Assembly: GCF_031769215.1 (NCBI RefSeq)
Contig: NW_026782032.1
Location: 310,001 to 374,000, forward strand
DNA from: Ylistrum balloti
Lineage: Eukaryota
DNA length: 64,000 nt
Direction of reading: 5' to 3'
Below are positions 24,749 through 61,343 of this stretch, one piece after another. The notes beneath the pieces were generated by a model. It worked only from the letters and a program-made list of their open reading frames with translations, had not been told where the DNA came from and did not search any database. A program made the translations under genes and the position numbers. How positions within the stretch are numbered: position 1 is the first letter of the stretch; the number at the start of each line of letters is the position of its first letter.

Positions 24749-27700
24749 TTATTCAAAAAAGACTTTTCCAGGGTTCATGATTCCTTTTGGATCAAATGTT
24801 CTCTTAAGCTGTCTCATCACCTCCATGCCCGTTTCTCCGATCTCTTTCTGAAGAAGTCCACGTTTACCCATTCCGATACCATGTTCTCCTGTACAGGTTC
24901 CATCCAATTCCATAGCAATTCTGTAAACATAATAACATAACAGTAGACCCTTAGTCATTTCTGAGCTGATTATGAATTCAAACAAGAGGCTGAATGGGCC
25001 TGCTTTGCTAATCTGATATTCATTAATACTTTTCTCAAATACATTCCCATCTAACATTATCAACCTTCAAGGTGGGTTGAAATCAATTCAAATAAAAAAA
25101 AATTGACAGATTATAATCCTAAGGGCTGATAATTATCATTAAGATTCTACAACTAGTTGATTCAGATCTGGAAGAAAATTTGAACCCTGTGCCCTTGGAT
25201 ATGGATATTCTTAGGAATTACCAGCCAAATATAATGATTCTAGACCTTTTAGCTGATCTGAAGAATTGGTTTCATCTCTGTGACTTCAATCATACTTCAC
25301 AGTAATTCTTTTCCATTTATGTTGCTATGGTATTTACTACTGTGCCCAACATAAACCCTCCATGCCACTTACACTGCTATGGTATTTACTACTTTGCCCA
25401 ATATAAGCCCTCGATGCCACTTACGTTGCTATGGTACTTACTACTGTGCCCAATATAAGCCCTTGATGCCACTTATGTTGCTATGATACTAACTACTGTG
25501 CCCAATATAAGCCCTCGATGCCACTTACGTTGCTATGGTACTTACTACTGTGCCCAATATAAACCCTCGATGCCACTTACGTTGCTATGGTATTGATCAC
25601 CATGTCCAATATAAAACCTTCCTTCCACTTACGTTGCTATGGTATCAGCTAGGCCTTGTACCAGTTCTACTTCCTTCTTATTTTCAGTGTCCAACAAAAA
25701 TAAGGTATGAAAATTGCCATCACCAACATGGCCGACCATGGACGCATCTACAATATAAACATATACCTGCAACAATCACTTACTCGGCCATGTACACTGA
25801 AACATCGCTGATCTTCTTCACCTCCTCGGGATTTGAGCGATCGGTGGGAAAAAAGACGTGAAAATTTCCATCCCCAACATGACCAACAATGGGACCTGGC
25901 AATGAGAAAAAGCCCTACAGTGCCAAGTTGGTCAATCAGAGGTCAGTGAGATGCCAACAGAGGACAGTGAGATGCCAACATAGGATGTAACAAGGATGTA
26001 AACAAACTTGTTTGCAAGAGAGAGTGAAAGTACAAATATATAGTCAGTTTAGAGAAAGATGTCTTTCAAACTTTCACAATCTGGCTGTGACGTGAAAATT
26101 ATCAGAGAAAGTGGTCGTGGAAAAGAGCTGTCGTAGTGTCTACATGTATGCATGCATTTTGTTTATATGATTTGAAACAGGATTCTAAGGAAAGAGCTAA
26201 ATATTGTAAAAAAAAGTTTTATACAGATGTGCATATCTAATAATAGTGAAAGCAATCAATACTAACTATTTACACCGACAAATGTCACTTCAATGTAATG
26301 TATTATTCCTATTAGGGATGAGGCCACTTTTAGTATGTTCAAAAATCTTTGTCAGCACTATGCAGCTTCATTTCAAAAGGAATTTTGATAAAACTTTGCA
26401 TTTGTATGAAAAAATATAATATCACAGACAAATTTGAGTTTCATTGTTATAGGGTCAAAATCAAGGTCAAGGTAACCATTCTTATTTTCAGAAAATATTT
26501 GACCTCTTGAGGGATTTCAAATTTCAAGTCTCCAAATTGTTGGGTTATGGTCAAGGTAACAGTTGGTATTTTCAGAAAATCCTTGTAAGCAATCTAGTGG
26601 CTTCATTCCACGAGGGATTTTGATTGAATAAGATGTCTTGTTTATGATGCAGTACTTACCAATGACCCCAGCCTTACGTATGGCCTCCTTCGACCTCACT
26701 ACAACCTCTGGTAAGTTGGATATAGGAACACAAACATCTGTAGAGTAGGGCTGAAAAATAAAAAAAAAAGTACTAAAGATGATAAAACTAACCAACCAAA
26801 ATAATAAAATCTGTTTATGATGGCAGGTAATCTACCAGAACAAGTCGAGGATGACCAAAAAATGATGCAATGTTTTACCTCGCATTTGATACCATCCTTA
26901 AGCCAGGACTGAGTCGCACATCACGGGCCAAACTGGCTTTCAGAGTCTCATGTCTAAACTTTAATATCTACCTCAAAGCCAGGACTGAGAGACACAAATA
27001 TGGTCAAACAGGATTCCAGAATGTCATGTCTAACCACCCATATCTACATTACTGCCAGATCTGAGGGTCATACTTAAGACAATGTCTAACCTTCCTTATT
27101 TACCACTGCCAGGTCAGGGAGCAATACAGGATGTCATGTCTAGCCTTCTACACCAACCTTACTGCCAGGTCAGGGAGCAATACAGGATGTCATGTCTAGC
27201 CTTCTACACCAACCTTACTGCCAGGTCAGGGAGCAATACAGGATGTCATGTCTAACCTTCTACACCAACCTTACTGCCAGGTCAGGGAGCAATACAGGAT
27301 GTCATGTCTAACCTTCCATACCAACCTTACTGCCAGGTCAGGGAACAAAACAGGATGAAAGCTCTTTTATCATGTCAAGCCCTCTATATTTATGTTACTG
27401 CTAGGTTTAAGGCTGCACATATCTAGCCTTCCATACTTACCTTAAAACAGGGTCTAAAGGCCACACAGATGGTCATGTCAAGTCTACCCTATTCTCCTTT
27501 TGCTAAGTTTGTGAGCCATACAACCACAGGATGTCATGTCTAACCTTCCATACCTACCTTACTGCCAGGTTTGAGGGCCATACAGGCATACAGGATGTCA
27601 TGTCTAACCTTCCATACCTACCTTACTGCCAGCTTAAAGGGCCATACAGGCATACAGGATGTCATGTCTAACCTTCCATACCTACCTTACTGCCAGGTTT

Positions 27701-30700
27701 GAGGGCCATACAGGCATACAGGATGTCATGTCTAGCTTTCCAAAGGTGATTTCTCTCGTCAGGATCTGATGCCCACTTAAACTCAGAACCACCATTCATA
27801 GTTGTGATTTCCTCTGCAAGGAGGCAAATGAAAATTGTCAACATTTGTTTTAATCATTCATTTGACTCAATTCAATTTTCTTACATTCTTAAATCAAAAT
27901 TGTATCTTAACTCTATGGAATTACTGAAATCATTTTTTAAAGTGACACAGGTTTTAAGGTAGCAAACTTTCATGTGTTCAAAATTTCAAGCATTTGGAAA
28001 ATAAAGCTGTACAATATTTCTCTTGTAGAATAAGCCAAATAGGCCGATACATTACCTCTGACTCAAAAATGAGCTGTGGGTTTATCACAGGAAAGTGTTT
28101 GTTATTCTACAGAACAGTCATAGATATGGACGATTTCCTTACCAGAAATGACCATAACTGCTTGATAAATATGGTAAATGTCATACTTACTGACAACCTC
28201 AGCCTGTTTGTCCAGTGTATCAGGACTTCCTGTGAACTCAAAGAACAGAGATGGTGCCACCTTCATATCCAGCTTGCTGTATCTATTACATGCATCTACA
28301 GATACCTCATCCAGGAATTCTACAACAAAGGAAACAAAACTTTACATACATATCACTTTTCTCCCTTTTTCAATGTCTAACTAGTTTGTTAGCTGGTTAT
28401 AACCTACCTATCTGGGCTACAGGAATCCCCATCTGTAGGTTGTTATGTGGATATAACTTACCTATCTGGGCTATAGAATTCCCTGTCTATAATTTGTTAC
28501 GTGGATATAACTTACCTATCCGGGCTATAGGAATCCCTGTCTATAATTTGTTATGTGGATATAACTTACCTATCCTGGCTATAGGAACCCCCACCTGTAG
28601 GTTGTTATGAGGATATAACTTACCTATCCTGGCTATAGGAACCCCCACCTGTAGGTTGTGTGGATATAACTTACCTATCCTGGCTATAGGAACCCCCACC
28701 TGTAGGTTGTTATGAGGATATAACTTACCTATCCTGGCTATAGGAACCGCCACCTGTAGGTTGTTGTGTGGATATAACTTACCTATCCTGGCTATAGGAA
28801 CCCCCACCTGTAGGTTGTTATGAGGATATAACTTACCTATCCTGGCTATAGGAACCGCCACCTGTAGGTTGTTGTGTGGATATAAGTTACCTATCCTGGC
28901 TATAGGAACTGCCATCTGTAGGTTGTTATGAGGATATAACTTACCTATCCTGGCAATAGGAACCCCCACCTGTAGGTTGTTGTGTGGATATAAGTTACCT
29001 ATCCTGGCTATAGGAACCGCCACCTGTAGGTTGTTGTGTGGATATAACTTACCTATCCGGGCTATAGGAACCCCCACCTGTAGGTTGTTGTGTGGATATA
29101 AGTTACCTATCCAGACTATAGGAACCCCCACCTGTAGGTTGTTACGTGGATATAACTTACCTATCCGGGCTATAGGAACCCCCACCTGTAGGTTGTTGTG
29201 TGGATATAACTTATTGTCTTGGCTATAGGAATCCCATACCTGTAGGTTGTTGTGTGGATATAACTTACCTATCCTGGCTATAGGAACCCCCACCTGTAGG
29301 TTGTTGTGTGGATATAACTTACCTATCCGGGCTATAGGAACCCCCACCTGTAGGTTGTTGTGTGGATATAACTTACCTATCCGGGCTATAGGAACCCCCA
29401 CCTGTAGGTTGTTGTGTGGATATAACTTACCAATCCTGTCTATAGGAACCCCCACCTGTAGGTTGTTGTGTGGATATAACTTACCTATCCTGGCTATAGG
29501 AACCCCCACCTGTAGGTTGTTGTGTGGATATAACTTACCTATCCTGGCTATAGGAACCCCCACCTGTAGGTTGTTGTGTGGATATAACTTACCTATCCGG
29601 GCTATAGGAACCCCCACCTGTAGGTTGTTGTGTGGTGTCTATGAACCCCCACCTGTAGGTTGTTGTGTGGATATAACTTACCTATCCTGGCTATAGGAAC
29701 CCCCACCTGTAGGTTGTTGTGTGGATATAACTTACCTATCCTGGCTATAGGAACCCCCACCTGTAGGTTTTTGTGTGGATATAACTTACCTATCCTGGCA
29801 ATAGGAACCCCCACCTGTAGGTTGTTGTGTGGATATAAGTTACCTATCCTGGCTATAGGAACTGCCATCTGTAGGTTGTTGTGTGGATATAACTTACCTA
29901 TCCGGGCTATAGGAACCGCCACCTGTAGGTTGTTGTGTGGATATAACTTACCTATCCGGGCTATAGGAACCGCCACTTGTAGGTTGTTGTGTGGATATAA
30001 CTTACCTATCCGGGCTATAGGAATCCCCATCTGTAGGATTTGAACCGTGGAGTCTACAGCCTCCTGGACATTGTTGAAGGAGCAAACAGCTGATATTGTC
30101 TGTATGGATGAAATAAGACATTAACAAACAATCTATGTGTACTTTTCACTATTTATGAAAAGGAACAAACAAAATCAGAAGTTCAGAACAATAGTTTCTG
30201 TCTAAATGTCTTATTCCAGGAAGATAAACAACCTAAGGAGACCGTTTAGAATCACAGAATGCAAATCATTGTCTTCATACTTTAAACTTATTACCATCAA
30301 ATATGAACAAAATCAGATAAATTAAGTAAACAAGTAACAGGCACACATATCTCAGAATATATGAAGAAAAGAAAAAAATAGCAGCCATCTTGTACTTTTG
30401 TAATTCAAACAACATGATATCTCTGTTACAATTTTCATGAATTAACAATTATTAAGAAGTATTCAACATCAAAGTGAATCTGACCAGTCAGAGAAGGCTA
30501 CATATTGTTGTTTTGACATTATTATCCTGCCAGTGGTCTAAAAGAGGTTTATGTCTAGTATCACTTACAGCCTCTGGTATACCGTGGAGACGAATGGTTG
30601 CCTGGGTGATGATACCAAGTGTGCCTTCAGATCCAACAAATAGATTTGTGAGATTATATCCTGCTGAAGTTTTTCTGTAGAAATGATAAAACATGACACA

Positions 30701-33700: not shown

Positions 33701-36700
33701 GTGTTACTCTGGTCACCCCTGCCTCCACAGTACAGTCAAAATCCTCAGCGTTGACAGATACTATTTTCTTCATCTTAGACAGGTCAAGACACAGACCTCC
33801 CTGTAACAGAGGTCAAATCAAGGAGGTTACATGACTTTATTTAAGGTTAAATTATGGAGGTCATGTGACCTCAAACAATATCGATATATGGGTGTCATTT
33901 TATGTTGAACAAGGTATTATTTTCACATCATGAAATCAAATCACATGCAAAATAAAAACACTACACATAACATACTGTTCTGAGATGATGATAGATTATA
34001 TGACCATAGCAACATTTTATGTCAAGCTTTCCATTTTCATCATTTTCACTCACCTTCAATGCATTTATGCCACCTTCCAGTCCAGTGCCACTACCAAAGG
34101 GGATGAGTGGCACCTCATTATCATTACACAGCTTGGCCACCCGACTCACATGTTCCGTATTCTCAGCAAAGGCCACAATGTCTGGTGGTGCGGTACTAAA
34201 AATACCACAAATAAGATGGAAGATTTTAGCAAGCAATATTGCAAATAAGTGAAGATTTTATCTCGATAATTATTTCTGATAATGTTCGTCTTTACACATC
34301 ATACTAAAGTATACCACTATTGTTTAAAATGTCTATAAGTAACACAAAATGTACTTGTACTTGTGAATGACAAGATGCTTCACAGGACATTGCCCTCTGT
34401 CTACTTTCATTCTTTCCTGTACCCATTCTACTCACTATCCTGTTGTCAGTGTAACAACACCCAATGTATGATATGTTTTGTTAATACAAGTGTGAACTAT
34501 GGTAAAGATATGAAGAGAAGATATTACCAATTTAGATTTTGTATAAAAAATGCTGTTTTCACAAATTTCCGTTTGAGTATCTATGTTCTGTGATAAAAAG
34601 CATCTTACATTTAATCATTTTGTACGAGATTTATGAATCTCGTCATGAATTTTTCAATTTAAAGTTCTCACTCATTTCATTAATCTCGCATGAATGGCAA
34701 CTTATGCAAGGTCCTCCAACCTTTTCTTCTTCTTTTTAAATAAGATACATAACTAGATCAAACAATGAGAAATATAACTACATAAATATTCAGAAATAAT
34801 TCTGGACACCAGGTCAGGCACAACGGATTCAACATAGACAATGTTATTATCAAAAACAAAGAAATCATTCTAGATCAAATCAATAAAAGAAATATCTACA
34901 GTTATTACAGTTATCACAGGGTCCTGATGAAGCCTCGAATAGAGGCGAAACTAGTAGACAATTAGTAAAAATTACCCACTAACTGGTGACACTTGTTCTT
35001 GTTGCGATTGATTCTCCTACGGTTTTATATCAGTTATTACAGTGATATAAGGATTTGATATGTACATCCAGTACTTACTCATGATAGGACTCATCATGGC
35101 CATGTTGTTCCCGTATGGCATCAGTTGTAGATACATTATCATTGCCAACTATATCAATGACAGCTTGGACAAAGCGATCTGGAATCTTGGCTTTTGTTAC
35201 TGTCTGTTCAAAGAAAGATAAGGGATTCATGCATGAGAAAATGAAAACTTTGTTTCCCATTAAGATAAAATTCTATAACCCTAACACTGGAGACACCCTC
35301 TACCACCCATACATTCTATAACCCTAACACTGGAGACACCCTCTACCACCCATACATTCTATGACTCTTAACACTGGAGACACCCTCTACCACCCATACA
35401 TTCTATAACCCTAACACTGGAGACACCCTCTACCACCCATACATTCTATAACCCTAACACTGGAGACACCCTCTACCACCCATACATTCTATAACCCTAA
35501 CACTGGAGACACCCTCTACCACCCATACATTCTATAACCCTAACACTGGAGACACCCTCTACCACCCATACATTCTATGACTCTAAACCCTAACACTGGA
35601 GACACCCTCTACCACCCATACATTCTATAACCCTAACACTGGAGACACCCTCTACCACCCATACATTCTATAACCCTAACACTGGAGACACCCTCTACCA
35701 CCCATACATTCTATGACTCTAACACTGGAGACACCCTCTACCACCCATACATTCTATGGAGACACCCTCTACCACCCATACCCTCTACCACCCATACATT
35801 CTATGACTCTAACACTGGAGACACCCTCTACCACCCATACATTCTATGACTCTAACACTGGAGACACCCTCTACCACCCATACATTCTATGACTCTAACA
35901 CTGGAGACACCCTCTACCACCCATACATTCTATGACTCTAACACTTGAGACACATTTTTACCATTCAAGCTATTAATTAGTCACAAACATAGCTGTATAT
36001 GAATAATGTAATAAGCTGAACAAGATGTGATTCCAAAGTTTGAAACTAATTGTGAAACCAACTTTGCGAATGGCTAACTCCAAAGGCAGCTATTGTTTTC
36101 TTGCATAGAATTATCAAGGTATTCTGCATGTCATTTAGAAATGGCACTTTACATTATATTAAAATGTCAGTGCCTTAGCCATTGACAGGTACTGGGCTGG
36201 ACTCTGTTAATTAGAATTTTTCCACTTCTATTCACTTGTGTTTTTTCTGTCCAAATACTCAAATTTTGAACACAAACAATTTTCCATATGATTCTGTTAA
36301 TGTGATTTGCAAAAAGTAAGTTATGAGTGGGGAATAATTACAAGCGTTCATTATTGAGATAACAAGTAACAATAGTGCATTTTATTTAACATTACCATCT
36401 ACCATACTTCCATAATTTTAAACTTAAAGATTGTGGATGTAAGTATTTTTCAAAAAGACAAATATATATATATATTTATGCCACTTAACTATTTTGGAAG
36501 CACAACATTTCTTATGTTATATATCCAGACATTTCTAAAGATATAAAAACTTGTTCTCTATTTTATAAAACATTTTCCACATACAAATAGACTTTGAAAT
36601 ATGCCTAGGTTGGAAGACATTGTTGAAAGCAGATACATGTAAAAGCTGTTGGCCTAGAAAATTATCTATTTGAACCTGCATGGCGCAATTTGAGAAAAAA

Positions 36701-37403: not shown

Positions 37404-37415
37404 GCAAGTCCAACC

Positions 37416-41632: not shown

Positions 41633-41658
41633 ACTTGTGTTGTACTGAGGACTTGTTA

Positions 41659-41664
41659 ATTAAA
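41659..41664 (+). terminator. Candidate RPL14 polyadenylation signal ATTAAA
   Basis: 27 nt after the stop codon, followed by GT/T-rich sequence. Confidence 0.55.
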
Positions 41665-44228: not shown

Positions 44229-47200
44229 TCACTCAAAAATGACTTTTCCAGGGTTCATGATTCCTTTTGGATCAAATGTTCTCTTAAGCTGCCTCATCAC
44301 CTCCATGCCCGTTTCTCCAATCTCTTGCTGAAGAAGTCCACGTTTACCCATTCCGATACCATGTTCTCCTGTACAGGTTCCATCCAGTTCCATGGCAATT
44401 CTGTAAACATAATCACACAGAAATAGAATCCATAGCCATAACTAATCAGGAGCGAGTGCGAGTTCGAACAAGAGGTCCAATTGGTCTGCATAATCTAGTA
44501 TTCAAATAATGGTTTCCTTGCATGAATTTACATATCGTATTAGTGACCTTCAAATATTGGCACTATCCAATTATTTTAAGATAAAATCTAGAAAGCTTAT
44601 ATTATTCAAGCTACACAATATTAACCCACAACTGCTGAATTCTGTTTTGGAAGGTAGATTTGACCCCTGTGACCTTGAATATGTATCCAGGCCTTTTCTT
44701 CATTTTTTGCAAACTTGTCAGTTTCTCATTACAGGTCTTTTAGTTAATAAAAAGAAGTTGTTGAGTGTTTTAAATTTGACTTGACTACTAAGTAATCTGT
44801 AATTGAGTCTAGGTCCATTTCTTAAGACAGCCTGTTTTAGGCTTCATCCAAGCATTATTATGATTCTAGACCCTTTGGTTTTTCAGAAGAAGTTGTTTGC
44901 GTGTTTCAGCAAATTTGACCCCTATGACATTTAATGGGGTCAATGTTATTTCTTTTCATAAGTGCTCTCAGCCTGCATACCAGGAACCTACCAGTAAAAT
45001 ATGATTTTAAGTCTTTTGGATAAAGTAATTTATGAGTTTTAACCCCATTACTTTGGTCAGGGTTATTTCTTTTCACAAGAAAGTTGTTTAAAGGCAAGGT
45101 GGTGCTGGACAGGCGCAGATGATGACAGACGGAAGCCTCACCTTGGCATAAGCTCAATTGACAAGGTCAGGTGAACTAAAACTTTTCTAAACAAAACCAA
45201 AACTGCATAACACATATGTATGATAATTTTATTACTGAACAAATGATGGTATTTCTTGCTCTGGCCAAGAGAAACCTTCTATTTCAATTTGTTGCTATGG
45301 TATTTATTACTCTGTCCAATAGAAACCCTCCATTTCATTTGTTGCCATGGTATGTATTACACTGTCCAATATAAAACCTTCATTCCACTTACGTTGCTAT
45401 GGTTTCGGCTAGGCCCTGAACCAGTTCTACTTCCTTCTTATTTTCAGTGTCAAATAGAAATAAGGAATGGATATTGCCATCACCAACATGGCCGACCATG
45501 AACGCATCTACAACATAAACATGCCTTCAGCAATAACCTACTCATTCATGTTTTTGGAGACATCTACATGCCATTGGTGGAAACAAATTGAATATCTCCA
45601 TCTCCAACATGATCAACACTGGCACTGATAAGAAAAAGCTTTTAAGGTCAACGAGATCTCAACATAAGAGGCATGTAACAAGAATACATACTGTAAAATA
45701 ACTTTTCTTTTCAGGTCTTTTTCAAGAAAGTTAACTGCTGCAAACTTCAGGTGATGAAAGTGCCCATGAATAAGAGGTGACCTCCATAGCTTGTCAATAT
45801 ATTTTTGTCTATTTTTTTCAAATCACTTGAAATTATAAATATTACAAAAAGTTTATACAAATGTGTATATCTTATGAAAGGAAAGTAAGTCGATACAATC
45901 TACAATAAGACATCATTGTATTGCCATCCATTGTAACACCAAACTAGCATACTGCCATTTGCCATGATGTTAAGGAACAGCTATGCAAATATCACTTTCC
46001 ATGCCCCTAATAAAACCGTCCCTCAACATCAGTAAATTAATTATCAACTTCACAGCTGACTGAGTCCACTAACAAGTTTTGTATTCTCTTTATATAAATA
46101 TATTTGAATGTGCGTTTTATTTGCTTATGCCAAAAACTTTTTGGATTTTTTTTCTGAACACATCACCATCTCAAGTTCCTCTGATTTTAATTCATGATGA
46201 TTGCAGACTTTTGCAAATTCTGCTATGTTGTAACGCTTATATGCATGTGCGAGATGAAAATGAAAAAGGGAATTCACAAAAAAGCTGAGTGTTAAAATAA
46301 CCAAAAAGGGACCTGTATCACTCACTCTGATATTTCAGCTTTCGCTTAAAACATCTTTATTCAACAAGATCCAAATGTTGCAGTTGAAACTTACTGGAGT
46401 ATGCTAGAATATTTGTGGGCTTCGGATTCACCAGGCAAGGTCAAGCAGTTGCTCTGCAGGTACCCTAAAGTAACGCACAGAAGATTCTTCTAATGAGATA
46501 GAGGAGGTTGCAGTCCAGAGTACTGGAGATGTCTTTGCTGATGAGTCACTTCACAGGCCTTGTCTTGAGTGGGGAAGAAGATGACCAGGTAACAGAAGCA
46601 ACAGCACGTGGGTCAACTGATCCAGAATGGTAGATGAAAAGGAATGGATGATATTTGAAGAAAATTTTTGGGCATGTTGGTGACAACAATGCAGGGCAAT
46701 GAGGATAAGAAGCTGGACACCCTAACAGCCATCACAAACATACAACTTGGGGAAGCAGTTCAGAACTATCTCCTCGCTCTGTGTTGAATACAATGCCTTT
46801 GATGGCAAGGTGGCTAACATGCTGAGCAACCCCTTCATTGACTTATCTACCCAGAAGGTCGCAATATCTTGATTCTCTGGATGCATAGAGCACACAAGCG
46901 TTCTGAGCCAGATGATTTGCGAGGCTAAAGCTGATAGGAGCAATTTGACAGTAGTTTGGCTTGAGTTACCCAATGCATATGGAGATATCCCTCACAAGCT
47001 GCTTGAACTAGCTACACAACATTATCATACCCTAGAACTTGTCACCGCATCACGAAGAAGTACTTTGATGGTATGCAACTCAGGTTCACAGCAACATGGC
47101 AGGATTTGGAGAAGGGAATAGTGACAGGTTGCACAGTGTCACCTATCCTATTTGTGATGGGTATGAACATCATCATGAAAGCCGCTGAGAGAGAGACTAG

Positions 47201-50200
47201 AGGGCCCAGAATGATATCAACCACCTGTTAAGCACAGAGGATACCATCTACACTGGATGATGTCGTGACTTGGGCTCAGATAAAGTTTAAGCTGAAGAAA
47301 TCACAGAGCATGATCAGCTGACAAAAGAGTTCGAACTTAGCGTCCAGGGGGAGGAGACACCATCTACTCTCAACAACCCAATGGAATGCTTCGGGAGATG
47401 GTGTGACGACACCCTGTTCAACAAGAAGAAGGTGGGTGAGATCAAGAAGCAAGTAGAAGAATGGCTGAATAGGATCGATAAATCGGGACTGCCTAAGAAA
47501 TTCAAAGCTTGGCTGTATCAACATGGTATTCTTCCCAGGTTGTCTTGGACCCATATGCTGTAGGAGTACGTAAAGACAGCAGTTGAATCCCTGGAGAGAT
47601 GCGCCAGGATAAAGTTTCAATCATGGCTTGGAGTATAATCTAAGTTTCAGTGGTAAATATTAATGTAGAAATATCTACTGTCTTATGCCTTGAAATTGAT
47701 ATGTTTAACAAAAGCTGTGGTATACAATATATAAACATTGATCCTGTGACATTTCTCATAGGAATCAAAAACTGCCAAACTGATACCCCCAAAAAAACCT
47801 TATTGGAAGAAAGGTGGTGGTATATCAGGGTTGTACTGTACTTACAACCACCACAATTATTTGATTATGATGGACATTACTTGTTAAAGTATCACAATAC
47901 TGGAATGAGAGTTTTAGTCTTCAGTACTTACCAATGGCCCCAGCCTGCTGTATGACCTCATTTGACCTCATTATGACCTCTGGTAAGTTGGATATTGGAA
48001 CACAAACATCTGTAGAGTAGGGCTGAAAAAGTCAAAAATGATAATCACGAAAGATGATAAAACTAACCAACCCCAATAATAAAATCTGTTTATGTTGACA
48101 AGTTGTCTAACAAAATAATTTATCAAGGCAAGAGTAAAACTTAGACATAAACAACTCGCAATCAACGTGCAAACTTTTTCTATACATAAAACTTTCTTAA
48201 CACGCATTTCATCTTTCATTTCACTGCTCTATATTTATCGTATCATTTTACAACAAAATTTGTAATTTTACATTTTATTTTATTTTTCGCTGTGGGTCTT
48301 TCTGGAAAAGAAAATGTTATACTACCTTACTATAAAATAAAACATCCAGACCTCCTCTTAAGCCTTATGGCTTTACAGAATATCAGAAAATTTTGTTAAT
48401 GCACAGTTGGCACAGGGTGGAAGTCTACATTAAATGACATGTCCTGAGCATTTCTTTTATCATCAAAAGGTGCTATTCCCATTTTGTGATTTTTGTACAA
48501 TCTTCTTCTTGAATAATGATTTTTTTCTTATTCAGAAAGTTGACCTCAGAAGTGTTTATTCTAGTCTACCTATTCTGCTATTATTCACAAGCCACATGTC
48601 CCGAGCATTTGTTTAATTAGTGTACTCAGCGGCATGCCGAATGCAATATAAATGTCCTTTCTTTTATTTTGTTGGTATCAACTGCTTTGAGAATTTGGAA
48701 CTTTGTCTCCAATAGCCTTCAACTTTCTAGATGTATCCATGTTAACACTCAGAAAACCAGTGAGTACTACATAGGACCACACCCTGCTGAGCAAAAAGAC
48801 CAAAAATATCATGGTTTGTTTTACCTTGTCTTCTCAGCCTCATTTGACTGGCACACAGCATGTCATATCTTGGCTACCATAGTTGCCTTACTACAAGGTC
48901 AACAAGACATACATTATGTCATGTCTAGGCTACTATACCTGCCTTTTACCAGGTCTGAAAGCCATACAGTATGTCATTTCCAGGCTGTCATACCTACCTT
49001 ACTACCTGGTTTGAGAGCCATATAGAATGTCATATCTAGGCTAACATTTCTTACTGCCAGGTCTAAGGGTCATACCGGATGGCATTTTTAGCCTTCCATA
49101 CTTATCTAAATGCCAGGTCTAAGGGTCACACTGGATGTCATTTTTAGCTTTCCATACTTATCTAACTGCCAGGTCTAAGGGTCATACCAGATGTCATTTT
49201 TAGCCTGCCATACTTATCCAACTGCTAGGTCTAAGGGTCATACCGGATGTCATTTTTAGCCTTCCATACTTATCTAACTGCCAGGTCTAGGGTCATACCG
49301 GATGTCATTTTTAGCCTGCCATACTTATCTAACTGCCAGGTCTGAGAGTCATACCGGATGGCATTTTTAGCCTGCCATACTTATCTAACTGCCAGGTCTG
49401 AGGGTCATACCGGATGTCATTTTTAGCCTTCCATACTTATCTAACTGCCAGGTCTGAGGGTCATACAGGATGACATGTCTAGCTTCCATATCTACCTTTT
49501 TGCCAGGCTTGAGGGCCATACAGGCATACAACATGTCATGTCTAGCCTTCCATAGACGGTTTCTCTCCTGGTGATCTGATGCCCACTTAAAGTCAGATCC
49601 ACCATTCAAGAAAGTAATTTCCTCTGAAAGGAAACAAATGGAAACTGTCATCATTTGTTTTCATAATTTATATGACTCCATTATATTTTCTTACATTCTT
49701 GTATCATAATTTCCAGAATCAATAAAATCATTATAAAGCGATACAGATCTGAAGTGTGAAACGTGCTAATTTTCCTCACCAGAAATGACCATCATTGCTT
49801 GATAGATATGGTAAATGTCATACTTACTGACAACCTCAGCCTGTTTGTCCAGTGTATCAGGACTTCCTGTGAACTCAAAGAATAAAGATGGTGCCACCTT
49901 CATATCCAGCTTGCTGTATCTATTACTTGCATCTACAGATACCTCATCCAGGAATTCTACAACAAAAGAAACAATATACACATAAACCTTTTCTTCCTTT
50001 TTTGATTCTTCTAACTAATTACCATATTGGTATAACTTACCTTACCTCACTATACAAATCCCCATATCTGGGCTATAGGAATCCCCATCTGTAGGTTGTT
50101 ATGTGGATATCACTTACCTATCCTGGCTATAGGAATCCCCATCTGTAGGTTGTTATGTGGATATCACTTACCTATCCTGGCTATAGGAATCCCACACCTG

Positions 50201-53200
50201 TAGGTTGTTGTGTGGATATAACTTACCTATCCGGGCTATAGGAATCCCCATCTGTAGGTTGTTATGTGGATATAACGTACCTATCCTGGCTATAGGAATC
50301 CCCATCTGTAGGTTGTTATGTGGATATAACTTACCTATCCTGGCTATAGGAACCCCCATCTGTAGGTTGTTATGTGGATATAACTTACCTATCCTGGCTA
50401 TAGGAATCCCCATCTGTAGGTTGTTATGTGGATATAACTTACCTATCCTGGCTATAGGAATCCCCATCTGTAGGTTGTTATGTGGATATAACTTACCTAT
50501 CCTGGCTATAGGAACCCCCACCTGTAGGTTATTATGTGGATATAACTTACCTATCCTGGCTATAGGAACCCCCACCTGTAGGTTATTATGTGGATATAGC
50601 TTACCTATTCGGGCTATAGGAACCCCCACCTGTAGGTTATTATGTGGATATAACTTACCTATCCGGGCTATAGGAACCCCCACCTGTAGGTTGTTATGTG
50701 GATATAACTTACCTATCCTGGCTATAGGAACCCCCACCTGTAGGTTGTTATGTGGATATAACGTACCTATCCTGGCTATAGGAACCCCCACCTGTAGGTT
50801 GTTATGTGGATATAACTTACCTATCCAGGCTATAGGAACCCCCACCTGTAGGTTATTATGTGGATATAACTTACCTATCCGGGCTATAGGAACCCCCACC
50901 CGTAGGTTATTATGTGGATATAACTTACCTATCCTGGCTATAGGAACCCCCATCTGTAGGTTGTTATGTGGATATCACTTACCTATCCTGGCTATAGGAA
51001 CCCCCATCTGTAGGTTGTTATGTGGACATAACTTACCTATCCCGGCTATAGGAACCCCCACCTGTAGGTTATTATGTGGATATAACTTACCTATCCTGGC
51101 TATAGGAACCCCCACCTGTAGGTTGTTGTGTGGATATAACTTACCTATCCGGGGTATAGGAATCCCCATCTGTAGGTTGTTATGTGGATATAGCTTACCT
51201 ATCCGGGCTATAGGAACCCCCACCTGTAGGTTGTTATGTGGATATAACTTACCTATCCGGGCTATAGGAACCCCCACCTGTAGGTTGTTATGTGGATATA
51301 ACTTACCTATCCGGGCTATAGGAATCCCCATCTGTAGGTTGTTATGTGGATATAACGTACCTATCCTGGCTATAGGAACCCCCACCTGTAGGTTGTTGTG
51401 TGGATATAACTTATTGTCTTGGCTATAGGAATCCCACACCTGTAGGTTGTTGTGTGGATATAACTTACCTATCCGGGCTATAGGAATTCCCATCTGTAGG
51501 ATTTGAACCGTGGAGTCTACAGCCTCCTGGACATTGTTGAAGGAGCAAACAGCTGATATTGTCTGTATGTATGAAATAAGATATTAACAAACAATCTATG
51601 TGTACTTTTCACTATTTATGAAAGGAAATAACAAAATCAATAGTTCAGAACAATAGTTTCTGTCTGAAAAGTCTCATTGCAGGAAGGAGACCATCTAGAA
51701 TCACATGATGCAAATCATTGTCTTCATACTTTAAACTTATTACCATCAAATATGAACAAAATCAGATAAATTAAGTAAACAAGTAACAGGCACACATATC
51801 TCAGAATATATGAAGAAAGGAAAAAAATAGTGGCCATCTTGTATTTTGAAATTCAAACAACATATTGTGTACTGAATGAAGGCCAATAATGCTACAAAGA
51901 ATTGCAAGTTGCCAGTATCCTCGTTAAGATTTATGTCTTGTATCACTTACAGCCTCTGGTATGCCGTGGAGACGAATGGTTGCCTGGGTGATGATACCAA
52001 GTGTGCCTTCAGATCCAACAAATAGATTTGTGAGATTATATCCTGCTGAAGTTTTTCTGTAGAAATGATAAAACATGACACATATTGTTTTCAATGTATT
52101 ACAGATAAACATAAGAAGTGTGTCGAAGTATGCGTTCCAGAAAAGTCAGGTTTATCTATTACTATATTGTACTATCACTGAGATGTGTTGTAGTTGTAGC
52201 TTAATAAGAAGCAGCATTGTTTAACTAACTCACTTATATCTTTTATACATCCCATAATACAGTTCTAACATTTTACTTTACCCAAGAAGCATCACTTACT
52301 TTGTGCGCCTTCCTTTACCAGCAGTGTAGATGATACGACCATCAGGCAGAACTACTTCCATGTTAAGGACATTTTCCCTCATGGTTCCGTACCTCACAGC
52401 ATTGGTACCTGAGGCACTGGTAGCACACATGCCACACAGGGAAGCATCTGCACCAGGGTCTACAAACACAACCAAATTAGACTCAAACATATGTGTCATG
52501 TGAGTCATCAGTTTTTTGGACATTACAAAGATAATCAGGAGAGCATCCTCCTACTTAACCTCGTACAATGTCTAAAGAAGAATGAATGGATATAACTCAT
52601 TGCTATAATTTCAAACGTGATTACCTGGTAGTCAGTAGTCACTATGGCCAGCATACATAAACGGGACAAATAGACATACATACCTAGATGTAGATGAGAC
52701 ATATGGGTTGATATATCTAACCCTTAGAATACATTCAGCTTCAGTTCAGAGCTTGTCTAATGTACTATATTCTACGTGTGTAATACAAATGTATATGTAG
52801 CATATGAAATATAAAGACGCTTACAACAAATTCACGGCTATACCATAGAAACTTCTAAGTCTGTTCAGGTAACTAATAACTAAGGATGTAATTAGGTGGC
52901 CATTAGTAATGACAGCCTCCCAACACAATCAAGTGTTGTATATCTATACAACTAGATCAGTGGCCAAGTGACAAATAAATAATGAGTGTACCTATAGGAA
53001 ATGTGAGTCCCGTATCCCTTAGGTAGTTGTTTAGTGTTAATCTGGTCACCCCTGCCTCCACAGTACAGTCAAAATCCTCAGCATTGACAGATACTATTTT
53101 CTTCATCTTTGACAGGTTGAGACACAAACCTCCCTGTAACAGAGGTCAAATCAAGGAGGTTACGTGACTTTAATCAAGGTTAAATGAAGGAGGTCATGTG

Positions 53201-56005: not shown

Positions 56006-57884
56006 AGATGTCTTCTTGTTGCAGATTTCCCGTTAATCTCAGCGAGGTATTACAGTAATATTGGGAGAACCAGATGACCAAAAAATTACACTGAAGTCAT
56101 GATAGAGTAGCCAATAACTTGTAGAGACAGCCAGCTGTCTCATGTGAAGTAACCGTGACTGCATAAAATTATCTGGCTCCTTGCATCCATGTGTATTTTG
56201 TTAGCTAATATTTGATAAGATCAAGAGTCCCATGAGGCCTGTATTGCTCATCGGGATGTTTCTACTTTCAATTCCAAATATTTTGATTAATATTATATTG
56301 TTTCATGTAAAACCTTCATTCAAGAAAAACAACTCAATAATGATTGCAAACTCTTAAGTCTCTTCCCCATACTGGGTCCTGCTCCCCTGATGTTCCATAG
56401 GTACTGGTTTTTATAAGGTTAGTGTGCGGTGCGTTATTTTATTTGCTATCGAAATCGAGTCAACAAGTACCCGGATGATGTAAGTGAAATCTATTTCCTT
56501 TCACCCATGGCCATACCTGAAACGAATCGAGTCATTTTTTTTCTTAACAACACTTATAGGCCAAGAAGAAGATGCATTTACAAGATTATACCACTCTACT
56601 CTATTGTATCAAGCCCCAAGGGTGAGACATAGCTACCGTCTATGTAAAATTTAATTTCCTTCATAAAAGAATGTTTCGGACTGAGTATGAACAAAATTCC
56701 TTGAAATAAAAGAAGGAATTTTGTTAACTGGCAAAGTTTTACTTATTAGGCCCAACCCTCGGGCACTAGGGCGCAAATATCAACAATTTTACAAAATTTA
56801 ACCCTAGCACGCTTCTAAACAGAATTTGTAAAATAGAATATATTCATCCCAAAAGAAAAAGGATTTTAAAGAGATTCCTTAATCTCTGATATTGAACCCC
56901 ACCCTTGGAGCCAAATTAGGGTGTCAGATCAACTGTTTATACTAAATTAAGACCCAATTCCACTTCTTATGAAACGGTCTGACAATATGACTGTGACTCT
57001 GGTATGATAGGACTAGGAATGGTAATTAGACATTTTGGTAAATTTTGGTTGAAAAGCTAGACGAACCAGTAATAAAGCTGTTTATATGGATATTTGTGAA
57101 GTTTAAGAATCCAATATGAACGAGAGAGGTCCGTATCCTGATATATAATAGACAATCTAAACCATTCCAATACTAAAATATGATTAACTAGTATTTCTTC
57201 TCTGGAGAGATTGGATAAGGCAATAAAGAACCCTATATATTTTTGCTATATTTTTTTCAACATTTTGAAACAAAATACTTTAAACTTTCCGTATTGGTTT
57301 AGCTCATGTTTTGTTATGTGATCCCCAGAAATACAAATACCCCGAGGCATATTTATACCGACTTGACCGATATCAATCAATATCTTGACAGCTTTCTGGG
57401 ACGACAAAGCAAAATTTTTTTTAATCCCTACCTACCGACTCTGTTTTTTAGGCAGAAACCGGATACAGTTTCTCCCTAATGTGTTTGTAGTGAAAAGTAG
57501 AGAAAAAGTCTGTTGTAATGTGCTGCATTGTCTGATAAATGACATGTATGAAAGGATAATGATTAGAAAAAACTTCATGTTGACGTCAAGATCCAACAAG
57601 ACCTTTAAGAGCTCCCAGGGTCATTAGGTTACTTCCCTTACAACGTTTTACCTAGTGAAAACGGGATAATGGAATATATGACGAATGGTATAACTGATGG
57701 CAGTTAATTATTACATTAGCAAAAATCGTGGCCAAATAAAGCATTTTACACTTAAGAAAGTTGATATCAAATTTGTTCTTGATTCTGTTTTTAATAAAAA
57801 AGAGTTCCGTACCTGTACTTCAAACCACATATGGAAGTTATTATAAGGCTGGGAAAATATGTATACTTATAGTCAACAGTCAGA

Positions 57885-58442
57885 CTAATCCTGACTAGTC
57901 AGACCTACGACCCCTGTCCCTGCTGTTAACTAATCCTGAATAGTCAGACCTACGACCCCTGTCCCTGCTGTTAACTAATCCTGACTAGTCAGACGTACGA
58001 CCCCTGTCCCTGCTGTTAACTAATCCTGACTAGTCAGACCTACGACCCCTGTCCCTGCTGTTAACTAATCCTGACTAGTCAGACCTACGACCCCTGTCCC
58101 TGCTGTTAACTAATCCTGACTAGTCAGACGTACGACCCCTGTCCCTGCTGTTAACTGATCCTGACTAGTCAGACCTACGACCCCTGTCCCTGCCGTTAAC
58201 TAATCCTGACTAGTCAGACCTACGACCCCTGTCCCTGCCGTTAACTAACCCTGACTAGTCAGACCTACGACCCCTGTCCCTGCCGTTAACTAATCCTGAC
58301 TAGTCAGACCTACGACCCCTGTCCCTGCCGTTAACTAATCCTGACTAGTCAGACCTACGACCCCTGTCCCTGCCGTTAACTACTCCTGACTAGTCAGACC
58401 TACGACCCCTGTCCCTGCTGTTAACTAATCCTGACTAGTCAA
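57885..58442. repeat. 45-bp minisatellite, about 12 copies, each with a 12-bp palindrome
   Basis: Unit ctaatcctgactagtcagacctacgacccctgtccctgctgttaa; starts at 57885 and 57930; palindrome CTGACTAGTCAG. Confidence 0.95.
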
Positions 58443-58644
58443 ACCCGCGACTCCTGTCACATGGCCACCAATGTGACATCCTTTATTACGTCACGTAAAA
58501 CATTGATTTCCTATAGTATTATTACGTCACTGTAATACATCCTTTGTCACCATTTGATGACGTAATAATTGCTCATCCTGGTAACTGAACTGTCACTTCG
58601 GGATTTATTAAGTGTATTGAATATAAGCAACTAAATTATTCAAC

Positions 58645-61343
58645 ATGTCGGAGAGATTAATGGAAGGAAAGATGTCCCTGTACGGGAAAAATGCCCCGTC
58701 CCCCGGGGAACTTGCTGGTCTATGGAAAAACGTCTTACAGGTGAGGAAAGCATAACATGACTTTACGAACAGGAGTGAGTAGTTTTTAAACGTTACAGTA
58801 ACTATATTCCTCTGTCTGCTTAGAACTAAGTCAGCATGTCGTGTGGTCGATAAGCAATTAATATTACATCCTGTAGATATTTATTTGTTAATTCAATGGG
58901 TCTTGCGTTCGAAATGAGGACTTTCGGCTTTTCGACAGAAGAAATCCCGTAAAAAAAGGAAAACCCTCCAAAGCCACGTGGTAACAACAGAATGGTTTTA
59001 TTGGATTTCAGAGAAGAGATGTCATCAATAAGCGACACTTGGCAACAGTGGGCAATGGAAGCCAATGGGTTGGCGTTAAACAATGGTCACAAAAAATGAT
59101 TGAAGATGGAAAGGATTCTATTTACGGTCCTCGAACACGAACTACCGTGGTAGGTAATTTTATGTACAGTCTCCTAAAACGAACTACCGTGGTAGGTAAT
59201 TTTATCTACAGTCCCAACACACTAACTACCGTGGTAGGTTATTTTATGTATGGTCCCCTAAAACAAACCATCATGGTAGGTAATTCAATCTACATTCCTC
59301 GAACACGAGCTACAGTGGTAGGTAATTTTATCTACAGTCCCCGAACACGAGCTATCGTGGTAGGTAATTCAGTCTACAGTCCCAACACACGAACTACCTT
59401 TGTAGGTAATTTTATCTACAGTCCCCGTACACGAGCTACCGTGATAGATAATTCAATCTACATTCCTCGAACACGAGCTACAGTGGTAGGTAGTTTTATC
59501 TACATTCCTCGAACACGAACTATCGTGGTAGGTAATTCAATCTACATTCCTCTAACACGAGCTACCGCGACAGGTAAATCTGTCCACGAACCCGAAAACG
59601 AGCTAATTAACCACGGAAGGTAACTCTATCCACGATTCCCGTGCACGAATTACGGTGGTGACTCCGTCTATGTTACATGCACACGAACTACGGTGATTAC
59701 TACGGTCTCCGCACGCGAACTTCTGTAGTTAGCACACTCTAACTCAATTTACGGCTCCTGCACTCAAATTACCGAAGTACGTAATTCCACCTACGGCACC
59801 CCGATACGAACTTCCGTATTAGGTAACTATCTACGGTCTCCGCACACCAATTCTCGTGGTAAGTAACTCTCTATAGGTGTTCGTACACGAACTACCATTG
59901 TACATTTTGTACTTCGTATACAGTTCGTGTACGCGAACCACCGCGGTAAAGAGGTAATATTCATTGTCTCGGTCGATCTAAAAACGTGCATTCGGAGTCA
60001 TCTTGTATATACTTTACATTTGTGATCCAATTTGATGAAAATTTGAAGTTTTTCAGTATCAGCGCGCGCTTGTACAAATTTTTGAGCATAGGATTTAAGT
60101 CACATCTAATCACATTGGATTATGTTCTGTTGCCTAAAAGTTGGTACATTTGCGCGCTGTGTGTCATAATTGCATGTGTGTGTGTGTGTGTGCGTGCGCG
60201 CGCGCACGCGCGTGTGTGTGTATGAGGGTGAGGGTGTGTGTGTGTGTGTTTTCTTTTTAATTATTTATGAGGCGGTCGATATTTTTAACTCTGTTAATGC
60301 TTTACACGTGGTTTTTAGACTGCCTGGTCTTGTATCTCCCTTTATTGTTTGTAGGCGGATGTATCGACAAATTACAAGCGGTTATTCCACATAAAGTATG
60401 GTTACGACAGTAAGATCCACAGAGATGACCGAAAACCTATGTCCACTACTGGTCAGGCTATGCATGATGAGGTATTCAGATTTTTTCTTTCTAAACGACA
60501 AGAATGATGAGGTATTCAGATTTTTTCTTTCTAAACGACAAGAATGATGAGGTATTCAGATTTTTTCTTTCTAAATGACATAGGGATGATGAGGTTCATA
60601 TTTTTTTCTTTCTAAATGACATAGGGATGATGAGGTAGTCAGATTTTTCTTCCTTCTAAATGACATAGGGATGATGAGATAGTCAGATTGTTTTCGTTCG
60701 TAATGACACAGGGATGACGAGGTATCAATATTTTTCTTACTGTTTCCGACTGTTATCGTATAAGGGTCGTCTCCACGGACGAGGACTTGAACATCTGATA
60801 ACTCTAGAACTTGCCATTGTTTGTCTTCACCGTAATATTCTACACATCTCACATAGACATTTCGCGATATACTTTGTATACATTTTGTGCCGATGTCGAA
60901 CCTGATTTTTAACTATACCACTGACGATATTAAAACCACAGGAACTAGAGAAATTGTTGTAAGTTTAGACATTTCTGTGTGTTAGTTAAACATTCAGAAA
61001 AGTCCGTCTACAAGGTGCGCAGACGGGTATCCTTTATATCAAACGAAATGTTCAATTAGATACGGCCAATTTCCCATCTCCTTCCTTTCGACCCCTCGAA
61101 AATGTAGGACGTTGAAACACATGGAGATATTCCCTCTTCGTTAAAACCGGAAGTGTACAGGATTTCCTCCATCTTTGTTTCCAGGAGACCCGCCGGACTG
61201 TTCCGGTTCTGACTTCATCCCAGTATGGAAATCGTGTGTATAAACCACTGGAAACCTTCAGTCGTTCGCACGTATGTATCGAACACATACAGAAAGGCTT
61301 CTACCACAAACGGGGTACGGGATTACCTCCCCTGGAGCCATAG
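58645..61343 (+). CDS. CFAP90: CFAP90/C5orf49-like cilia/flagella-associated small protein, 169 aa; exons 58645-58740, 59012-59149, 60355-60471, 61185-61343
   Basis: All phase-0 GT-AG joins. RLFHIKYGYDSKIHRDDR...DE|ETRRTVPVLTSSQYGNR...FY matches the remembered C5orf49 core (YDQKLHRDDREH...EEE..PVGVLTSSVYGKR...FY). AATAAA at 61353-61358. Exons 3-4 are well supported; exons 1-2 rest on splice signals and frame only. Confidence 0.72.
59115..59960 (+). repeat. 42-bp minisatellite built from the CFAP90-like exon 2 end plus donor, about 12 clear copies then degenerate
   Basis: Unit acgaactaccgtg|gtaggtaattttatctacagtcccaacac-like; period 42 at 59147/59189; open in the exon frame to the stop at 59623. 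Confidence 0.88.
60171..60249. repeat. (GT)n/(GC)n compound microsatellite
   Basis: Strict pyrimidine-purine alternation over 60171-60224, including the 18-bp palindrome 60192-60209. Confidence 0.9.
60463..60730 (+). repeat. About 40-bp minisatellite built from the CFAP90-like exon 3 end plus donor, about 7 copies
   Basis: Unit gatgag|gtattcagattttttctttctaaacgacaagaat; starts at the real donor (60472) and decays distally. Confidence 0.88.

What the first reader, a model, noticed from the sequence alone, without database searches (positions are those of the whole stretch)
25315..60730. Recurrent system: intronic minisatellites made from the upstream exon end plus its 5' splice site (8 arrays, 3 genes)
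Seen: directly after the real donors of LDHD exons 7, 9 and 11 (both paralogs) and CFAP90-like exons 2 and 3, the intron is a tandem array whose unit is the last roughly 8-48 nt of that exon, the donor, and a few intron bases. Units of 54 and 42 bp are triplet multiples, stop-free in the exon frame for many copies, and keep GT donors in the same phase as the real one. Units of 52, 56, 64 and 40 bp are out of frame or bring in a stop, and several have lost GT (ATAAGT, AAATTG). Established: tandem duplication across a splice site is a proposed route to intron gain and to new alternative donors. Inference: donor-anchored repeat expansion is a recurrent process here, filtered by selection according to reading frame. 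It could act as a VNTR-tunable splicing switch (protein elongation, NMD, or U1 snRNP decoying).
Basis: partly seen in the sequence, partly recalled or inferred. Interest (0 to 1): 0.88.

Follow-up and report, generated by a model that had tools for sequence, protein, structure and literature searches.

The report
Splice-junction minisatellites in a scallop
In this scallop genome several introns begin with tandem repeats copied from the end of the preceding exon plus its splice donor; this kind of repeat is already known from amphioxus ("mirages") and one human gene, splicing still uses the first donor, and the proposed frame-dependent "splicing switch" is not supported.

Summary
All eight arrays (LDHD-A and LDHD-B exons 7, 9 and 11b; CFAP90-like exons 2 and 3) have units made of 8-57 nt of exon end, the donor, and 5-39 nt of intron.

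The window is from the scallop Ylistrum balloti: my spliced LDHD-A model is 100% identical to XP_060066409.1.

This kind of repeat is known as amphioxus "mirages" and as the human F7 IVS7 repeat. It appears unreported for molluscs.

The process is recurrent:
- Pecten maximus, Mizuhopecten yessoensis and Argopecten irradians also carry an exon 9 donor array in LDHD, with units of 70, 64 and 50 bp and up to about 117 copies.
- Those species and Dreissena carry different junction arrays elsewhere in the gene, some on the acceptor side.

RNA contigs from Y. balloti and A. irradians, and all RefSeq isoforms retrieved, use only the first donor.

The frame-selection idea fails. Triplet units are 2 of 9, as chance predicts. 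Large out-of-frame arrays keep GT in 83-89% of copies.

Best reading: near-neutral junction minisatellites, tolerated because the most upstream donor wins. They are over-represented at junctions for a reason still open.

The scan noted the same thing on other DNA of this genome, and another follow-up agent reached the same reading.

The parts
30006..30099 (-). LDHD-A exon 7; its last 32 nt are the exon part of the 54-bp unit
   Evidence: RNA joint 30006|28319; tblastn; spliced model 100% identical to XP_060066409.1
28394..30037 (-). 54-bp junction minisatellite in LDHD-A intron 7. It has 30 copies, 29 of them with GT. It is in frame for 7 copies, until a 35-nt donor-less unit at about 29659-29625.
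28191..28319 (-). LDHD-A exon 8, joined to the first donor of exon 7
   Evidence: joints
27686..27813 (-). LDHD-A exon 9; its last 57 nt are the exon part of the 64-bp unit
   Evidence: RNA joints 28191|27813 and 27686|26750
27105..27742 (-). Junction minisatellite in LDHD-A intron 9: 64-bp units (27742-27526), a decayed stretch, then 56-bp units (27357-27105). 9 of 11 copies keep GT.
25784..25895 (-). LDHD-A exon 11a, the member of the mutually exclusive pair used in the RNA contig
25633..25747 (-). LDHD-A exon 11b, the alternative member. It lies 36 nt downstream of 11a; its last 13 nt are in the 52-bp unit.
25313..25645 (-). 52-bp junction minisatellite after exon 11b of LDHD-A; 7 copies, 5 with GT
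51469..51562 (-). LDHD-B exon 7
50071..51500 (-). 54-bp junction minisatellite in LDHD-B intron 7; 26 copies, 25 with GT. It shares a donor-less variant unit with paralog A.
49496..49623 (-). LDHD-B exon 9 (start approximate)
48908..49524 (-). 56-bp junction minisatellite in LDHD-B intron 9; 12 copies, most carrying one spread ATAAGT variant, so 2 of 12 have GT
45393..45507 (-). LDHD-B exon 11b (start approximate); this paralog has no 11a
45246..45403 (-). 50-bp junction minisatellite after LDHD-B exon 11b; 3 copies, the two decoys lack GT
59012..59149 (+). CFAP90-like exon 2. Its end is inferred from reading frame: donor GTG|GTAGGT.
   Evidence: inference from the phase of exon 3
59115..59620 (+). 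42-bp junction minisatellite after CFAP90-like exon 2. It is in frame and open for about 11 copies; most copies keep GT.
60355..60471 (+). CFAP90-like exon 3 (Pfam CFAP90 profile positions 12-47)
60464..60738 (+). 40-bp junction minisatellite after CFAP90-like exon 3; 7 copies, 6 with GT, weak GTATTC donors
61116..61340 (+). Open frame holding CFAP90-like exon 4 (Pfam CFAP90 profile positions 42-91)

Best explanation
These are 'mirage'-type junction minisatellites in the scallop Ylistrum balloti.

Origin: a short segment of 40-70 bp spanning an exon end and its 5' splice site was duplicated in tandem and then expanded by unequal exchange or slippage. Copies within an array are kept alike by concerted evolution.

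Why they are tolerated: the spliceosome uses the most upstream donor, the one attached to the real exon. Every downstream copy is therefore removed as intron.

Function: the arrays have no demonstrated function and behave as near-neutral passengers.

What is shown: the anatomy, the shared ancestry of the arrays in paralogs A and B, recurrence and turnover across bivalves, and first-donor use in assembled transcripts and annotated proteins.

What is inferred: neutrality, the duplication mechanism, and the cause of the excess at junctions. Two causes are possible. One is that the selectively constrained first copy acts as a master copy that keeps the array recognisable for a long time. The other is a mutational bias at splice junctions.
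For: Anatomy.

Species: the spliced LDHD-A model is 100% identical to Y. balloti XP_060066409.1.

First donor used:
- RNA-derived contigs of run X6 give joints 30006|28319 and 27686|26750 with GT..AG ends.
- An A. irradians cDNA contig (L005) joins exon 9 at its first donor to exon 10, across a 6-kb intron holding about 112 decoy units.
- All RefSeq LDHD isoforms of four scallops are 495-497 aa.

Concerted evolution: paralogs A and B share a rare donor-less unit, yet each array has its own dominant variant.

Recurrence and turnover:
- The exon 9 donor array is present in all four scallop genera, with units of 64/56, 70, 64 and 50 bp that differ by indels in one shared unit.
- Exon 7 donor arrays have different unit boundaries in Y. 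balloti (54 bp) and M. yessoensis (71 bp). P. maximus and A. irradians have none.
- Acceptor-side arrays occur in P. maximus exon 8, A. irradians exon 10 and Dreissena exon 3.

The intronic part of the 54-bp unit resembles the start of the array-free P. maximus intron 7, by my reading of the two sequences, so the unit looks like an ancestral junction.

Precedents: the F7 IVS7 experiments show that identical downstream donors stay silent (PMC1557585). Amphioxus mirages do not disturb splicing (PMC3087553, PMC3902484).

Background: tandem repeats are 20.8% of the window by my sum of the intervals. They are 21.7% of a related scallop genome (PMC10225492).
Against: Neutrality is not demonstrated.

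The excess at junctions needs an explanation that plain random duplication does not give. In the window, about 5 of 13 independent arrays are at donors against about 0.6 expected. In bivalve LDHD loci, 7 of 24 arrays are at junctions against about 2.4 expected.

The exon 9 array seems to have persisted since the common ancestor of four scallop genera. That could also mean it is maintained by selection.

The RNA evidence consists of assembled contigs and gene models, which hide rare isoforms. There is no RNA evidence for CFAP90-like or LDHD-B. Copy-number polymorphism could not be measured.
Confidence: 0.75

Rival explanations
1. Functional splicing device. The donor ladders would act as a tunable switch: downstream donors are used to lengthen the protein (in-frame arrays) or to trigger mRNA decay (out-of-frame arrays). 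Alternatively, the copies would recruit or decoy U1 snRNP to modulate splicing, transcription or premature polyadenylation, with selection acting according to frame.
For: Most copies keep strong donors identical to the real one: 29/30 and 25/26 in the exon 7 arrays, and 83-89% in arrays of more than 100 copies. The exon 9 array is present in four scallop genera. The 52-bp array sits beside a mutually exclusive exon pair.
Against: Only the first donor is seen in RNA contigs of two species and in all annotated isoforms. There is no excess of triplet units (2 of 9). Donor retention is not tied to frame once the large out-of-frame arrays are counted. Arrays come and go between species at the other junctions. 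High GT retention is expected from recent homogenisation alone. An 18-aa insert in the middle of a conserved FAD-linked oxidase is unlikely to be tolerated (my inference).
Confidence: 0.08
2. Splice-junction-targeted mutational process. The arrays would be born preferentially at splice junctions because of something that happens there, such as transcription- or splicing-coupled DNA damage and repair by template switching, or sequence motifs at junctions that favour slippage. The excess would then reflect mutation bias, not survival. This reading is compatible with the best explanation and bears only on origin.
For: There is an excess at junctions in the window and across bivalve LDHD loci. Arrays arose independently at the same exon 7 donor, with different unit boundaries, in two genera. 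Scan notes report many further cases in this genome, including arrays of 40 to about 250 donor copies (not checked by me). A possible ACAG microhomology lies at the 54-bp unit boundary (weak).
Against: No mechanism is shown. Unit boundaries vary widely (8-57 nt of exon, 5-39 nt of intron), and both donor and acceptor sides are hit. A survival bias could give the same excess: a constrained master copy keeps junction arrays detectable, while duplications inside exons are removed by selection. Oyster and mussel LDHD have no junction arrays.
Confidence: 0.15
3. Assembly artefact: the arrays are mis-assembled or over-expanded repeats.
For: Short-read contigs of independent runs do not span the long arrays, and some show jumps within them.
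Against: Array edges joined to unique flanks are present in contigs of independent DNA runs (table 8). The arrays occur in both paralogs with distinct variants. Homologous or analogous arrays occur in four other, independently assembled, bivalve genomes.
Confidence: 0.02

Closest known systems
Amphioxus 'mirages': minisatellite-like tandem duplications of exon-intron boundaries. Described for Adh3 (Canestro et al. 2002, cited in PMC3087553), globins (PMC3087553), PGBD5 and troponin C (PMC3902484).
   Same: Tandem arrays whose unit spans an exon-intron boundary. Units are tens of bp. Both donor and acceptor sides occur. Many copies keep AG/GT signals. Normal splicing is not disturbed. Several genes are affected in one genome. 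Copies evolve in concert.
   Different: Mirages are described only in cephalochordates; this is a bivalve mollusc. Here some arrays are far larger (30 to about 117 copies), and one junction array is shared by four genera. No genome-wide census exists for either group. I could not read the original 2002 paper.
Human F7 intron 7 37-bp VNTR (Borensztajn et al. 2006, PMC1557585)
   Same: The first monomer spans the exon-intron boundary. The downstream donors are identical to the real one, yet only the most upstream is used.
   Different: It is a single locus with 5-9 copies. Silence of the pseudo-sites was shown by mutagenesis there; here it is only inferred from transcripts. The case here is recurrent in one genome and reaches more than 100 copies in relatives.
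Intron gain by tandem duplication across an AGGT proto-splice site (Rogers model; discussed in PMC3087553)
   Same: Tandem duplication creates extra, potentially usable splice sites.
   Different: No new intron is created here. Introns 7, 9 and 11 exist without arrays in other bivalves. The duplication only lengthens an existing intron.

Membership tests
Mirage-type junction minisatellite | Head-to-tail array with a minisatellite-size unit | tested here: met
   TRF periods of 40-64 bp, 3-30 copies, 78-97% matches
Mirage-type junction minisatellite | The unit spans a real exon-intron boundary, and the terminal copy is the functional junction | tested here: met
   For LDHD-A, exon ends are fixed by RNA joints and a 100% match to the RefSeq protein, and units hold 13-57 nt of exon. 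For CFAP90-like, exon ends rest on Pfam and frame only.
Mirage-type junction minisatellite | Regular splicing is not disturbed | tested here: met
   First donors appear in RNA contigs, and annotated proteins have normal length. Rare isoforms are not excluded.
Mirage-type junction minisatellite | Length instability or polymorphism between haplotypes | tested here: inconclusive
   Copy number differs between paralogs (30 against 26; 11 against 12; 7 against 3) and between species. Short-read contigs cannot measure alleles.
F7 IVS7-type donor VNTR | [quoted passage not shown] | tested here: met
   In the LDHD-A exon 7 array, 23 of 29 downstream copies carry the same TAG|GTAAGT 9-mer as the real donor
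F7 IVS7-type donor VNTR | Only the most upstream donor is used | tested here: met
   at the level of assembled transcripts and gene models
F7 IVS7-type donor VNTR | Pseudo-donors become active when the upstream donor is inactivated | not testable with these tools
   Needs minigene mutagenesis
Intron gain by tandem duplication | A new intron, absent from relatives, lies between duplicated AGGT sites | tested here: not met
   The same introns exist in P. maximus, M. yessoensis, A. irradians, oyster, mussel and Dreissena

The most novel reading that the evidence does not exclude
Scallops, and to a lesser degree other bivalves, would have a splice-junction-directed process that seeds minisatellites at 5' and 3' splice sites far above the random rate, convergent with amphioxus. 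Some of these arrays, such as the LDHD exon 9 ladder kept in four genera and reaching more than 100 live donors, would be maintained because many U1 sites benefit the gene. That would be a new link between splicing and genome instability, and a natural test bed for how the first of 100 identical donors is chosen.
Probability: 0.15. Interest if true: 0.75.

Novelty: new member of a known kind. Interest (0 to 1): 0.5.

Why it matters
Exon-intron boundary minisatellites are described only for amphioxus and for one human gene. Finding them frequent, recurrent and sometimes very old in scallops suggests a general, under-studied way in which introns grow and splice sites are multiplied.

The arrays are natural experiments on 5' splice-site choice: up to about 117 near-identical donors, yet the first is used.

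They also matter in practice. They can mislead gene predictors, because the in-frame arrays read as open frames of 170-360 aa, and they are hard to assemble.

Tried and rejected
- Amphioxus origin of the window. I suspected this from the mirage literature. It is rejected: the LDHD model is 94% identical to P. maximus and A. irradians proteins and 100% identical to a Y. balloti protein.
- Rfam scan of the window at gathering thresholds: no match.
- Single-exon search of the representative library. It gave only unnamed fragments, and two of the best-matching contigs had no DNA available.
- The original mirage paper (PMC117041, doi 10.1093/nar/gkf386) is not held.
- A first fuzzy-regex copy count skipped copies and was replaced by a Hamming scan.
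- Frame-dependent donor retention. It is significant only if copies are treated as independent, and it is rejected at array level and by the large out-of-frame arrays in relatives.
- Intron gain: rejected, because the introns are shared by all bivalves examined.
- The 43-bp array in LDHD-A intron 1 (35270-35953) and the 45-bp array upstream of CFAP90-like (57884-58458) contain no exon sequence. They are ordinary minisatellites.
- Copy-number variation and array collapse could not be judged from short-read contigs.
- The units of the arrays at 2.5-22 kb of the window show no strong donor (GTAAGT-type) motif by eye, but the genes there were not annotated. I counted these arrays as non-junction, and that may be wrong.


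Full report
**What is there.** TRF lists 27 separate tandem-repeat tracts in the window. By my sum of their intervals they cover 13.3 kb, or 20.8% of the window. This is close to the 21.7% reported for a related scallop genome (PMC10225492). A self-comparison shows two tandem paralogous segments, 24.7-37.1 kb and 44.2-56.0 kb. Both carry a D-lactate dehydrogenase (LDHD) gene on the minus strand (Pfam FAD_binding_4 and FAD-oxidase_C; tblastn). A CFAP90-like gene lies on the plus strand from about 59 kb (Pfam CFAP90 on exons 3 and 4).

Read on the gene strand, every one of the eight arrays starts inside an exon.

| Array | Last exon nt | Unit | Composition | Copies |
|---|---|---|---|---|
| LDHD-A exon 7 | 30006 | 54 bp | 32 nt exon + 22 nt intron beginning GTAAGT | 30 |
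| LDHD-A exon 9 | 27686 | 64 bp, then a 56-bp derivative | 57 nt exon + 7 nt intron | 11 |
| LDHD-A exon 11b | 25633 | 52 bp | 13 nt exon + 39 nt intron | 7 |
| CFAP90-like exon 2 | 59149 | 42 bp | not split here | about 11-13 |
| CFAP90-like exon 3 | 60471 | 40 bp | 8 nt exon + 32 nt intron | 7 |

Paralog B has the orthologous three LDHD arrays. The A and B exon 7 arrays share a rare donor-less variant unit. Each array also has its own dominant variant in the intronic part. So the arrays predate the gene duplication, or were exchanged between copies, and have since been homogenised separately. The eight arrays are therefore five independent ones.

**Organism and exon ends.** I joined the LDHD-A exons at the coordinates given by spliced contigs and by sequence motifs. 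This gave an open frame of 466 aa. It is 94.4% identical to Pecten maximus LDHD X2 and 94.0% identical to Argopecten irradians X2. It is 100% identical to XP_060066409.1, LDHD isoform X2 of Ylistrum balloti. The window is therefore from this scallop, not from amphioxus as the literature lead first suggested. LDHD-B corresponds to a second Y. balloti protein, XP_060066422.1.

**Which donor is used.**
- Run X6 is labelled 'DNA?' but holds spliced contigs. Its joints are 30006|28319, 28191|27813, 27686|26750, 26658|25893 (cut +2) and 25784|24920, all with GT..AG ends on the minus strand. The first donor is thus used at exons 7 and 9.
- That contig uses exon 11a and skips 11b.
- P. maximus isoform X2 carries 11a and X1 carries 11b. 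Exons 11a and 11b are 112 and 115 nt and lie 36 nt apart. This makes them a conserved mutually exclusive pair. Exon 11b is therefore a real exon, but an alternative one.
- All RefSeq LDHD proteins of the four scallops are 495-497 aa, apart from one 488-aa GenBank model. None has an 18-aa insert.
- In A. irradians a cDNA contig (L005) aligns to the genomic locus with exon 9 ending at its first donor (about 9313) and exon 10 starting at 15301. It skips a 6-kb intron that holds about 112 decoy units.
- Contigs drop rare variants, so minor use of downstream donors is not excluded.

**Recurrence across species.** I fetched the LDHD locus of six other bivalves.

| Species | Junction arrays in LDHD |
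|---|---|
| P. maximus | 70-bp x 7 array at the exon 9 donor (57 nt exon + 13 nt intron); 44-bp x 5 array built from the acceptor plus the first 14 nt of exon 8; none after exons 7 or 11b |
| M. yessoensis | 71-bp x 6 array at the exon 7 donor (38 + 33 nt); 64-bp exon 9 donor array of about 117 copies over 7.5 kb; a two-copy duplication of the exon 11a acceptor junction |
| A. irradians | 50-bp exon 9 donor array of about 112 copies; about five copies of the exon 10 acceptor junction |
| Dreissena polymorpha | about 16 copies of the exon 3 acceptor plus 24 nt of exon |
| Saccostrea cucullata | none |
| Mytilus galloprovincialis | none |

The exon 9 units of the four scallops share their exon part and differ by indels, mainly in the short intronic part. 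The simplest reading is one ancient array. The exon 7 arrays of Y. balloti and M. yessoensis have different boundaries, and the other two scallops have none, so those look like independent births. The intronic 22 nt of the Y. balloti 54-bp unit resembles, by eye, the first 22 nt of the array-free P. maximus intron 7. That suggests the unit is a copy of an ancestral junction.

**Is it more than chance?** I used a rough model: a seed of about 50 nt placed at random, and about 48 donors in 51 kb of non-repeat sequence.
- In the window it predicts about 0.6 donor-straddling arrays among about 13 independent arrays. Five are seen (P about 3e-4).
- In the LDHD loci, 7 of 24 arrays overlap a junction (four donor-side, three acceptor-side), with the exon 9 array counted once. 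About 2.4 are expected (P about 0.008; between 0.008 and 0.03 depending on the assumed target size).
- These are estimates, not a genome-wide test. The arrays at 2.5-22 kb of the window were counted as non-junction without gene annotation.
- Scan notes report many further cases on other DNA of this genome. I did not check those.

**The frame hypothesis.**
- Units that are multiples of three are 2 of 9 unit types, which is the chance rate.
- Once such a unit is open, all its copies are open by descent, so 'stop-free for many copies' carries no extra information.
- GT retention among decoy copies is 61/65 for in-frame arrays and 27/46 for out-of-frame arrays in the first data set. That contrast comes from a few variants spread within arrays, for example ATAAGT in 7 of 11 decoys of LDHD-B exon 9. 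At array level it gives P = 0.2.
- The large out-of-frame arrays of M. yessoensis and A. irradians keep GT in 89% and 83% of copies, and the P. maximus array in 7 of 7.
- By eye, retention seems to follow array homogeneity better than frame; I did not test this. There is no evidence for selection by frame.

**What is known.** Tandem repeats spanning exon-intron boundaries were named 'mirages' in amphioxus Adh3. They were later seen in amphioxus globin, PGBD5 and troponin C genes, on both donor and acceptor sides, without disturbing splicing (PMC3087553, PMC3902484). The human F7 gene has a 37-bp repeat whose first unit spans the exon 7 boundary. Mutagenesis showed that the identical downstream donors are competent but silent because the most upstream site wins (PMC1557585). 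Literature searches found no report for scallops or other molluscs. The library is incomplete, so this absence is weak evidence.

**Verdict.** The arrays are real junction minisatellites of the mirage or F7 type, here in a mollusc. They are tolerated because the first donor is used. They are recurrent, with turnover at most junctions and long persistence at one. The excess at junctions is real as far as I can measure, but its cause is open: either survival through a constrained master copy or a mutational bias. The splicing-switch and frame-selection ideas are not supported. Another follow-up agent of this scan reached the same reading on other DNA of this genome (s1-258768). I had reached mine before seeing that note.

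Noticed in passing
window 25633-25895 (minus strand): LDHD-A has a mutually exclusive exon pair, 11a (112 nt) and 11b (115 nt), separated by only 36 nt. That is too short for an intron, which would enforce exclusivity (my inference). The pair is conserved in P. maximus, A. irradians and Y. balloti as isoforms X1 and X2. LDHD-B has only the 11b type.
   Followed up: partly
window 24.7-37.1 kb and 44.2-56.0 kb: LDHD is tandemly duplicated in Y. balloti, with RPL14 between the copies. At the loci fetched for P. maximus, M. yessoensis, the oyster and the mussel, one LDHD gene lies head-to-head with RPL14. Non-repeat identity between A and B is about 80-95%.
   Followed up: partly
L011 5040-5646 (Dreissena polymorpha LDHD): About 16 tandem copies of the exon 3 acceptor plus the first 24 nt of the exon lie upstream of the real acceptor. 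So junction minisatellites also occur outside scallops.
   Followed up: partly
ENA contig of sample ERZ25073280, no DNA available: A relative's LDHD locus shows six 40-aa called ORFs at a 115-nt period directly after an exon with a FAD-oxidase_C match. This is probably another junction array.
   Followed up: no
window 25145-25344: Word depth is 300-530 in three DNA runs, against about 10-40 nearby. This is a high-copy dispersed repeat in the last LDHD-A intron.
   Followed up: no
window 27705-28186: A contig of run X1 differs at 22 of 482 positions here, while neighbouring pieces differ at 1-5. This suggests a divergent haplotype or an exchange with the paralog.
   Followed up: no
L006 7750-7820 (P. 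maximus intron 7): A tRNA-like segment, probably a SINE, lies just downstream of the exon 7 donor, where Y. balloti has its 54-bp array.
   Followed up: no
window 2.5-3.7, 12.8-14.7, 16.4-19.2, 21.0-22.0, 35.3-36.0 and 57.9-58.5 kb: Large minisatellites without an obvious exon-junction origin. The 35.3-36.0 and 57.9-58.5 kb arrays hold no exon sequence by direct reading; for the four upstream arrays no junction origin is obvious, but the genes there are not annotated. Tandem repeats make up 20.8% of the window.
   Followed up: partly
run X6: The run is labelled 'DNA?' but its contigs are spliced cDNA of LDHD-A, so it is an RNA data set.
   Followed up: yes
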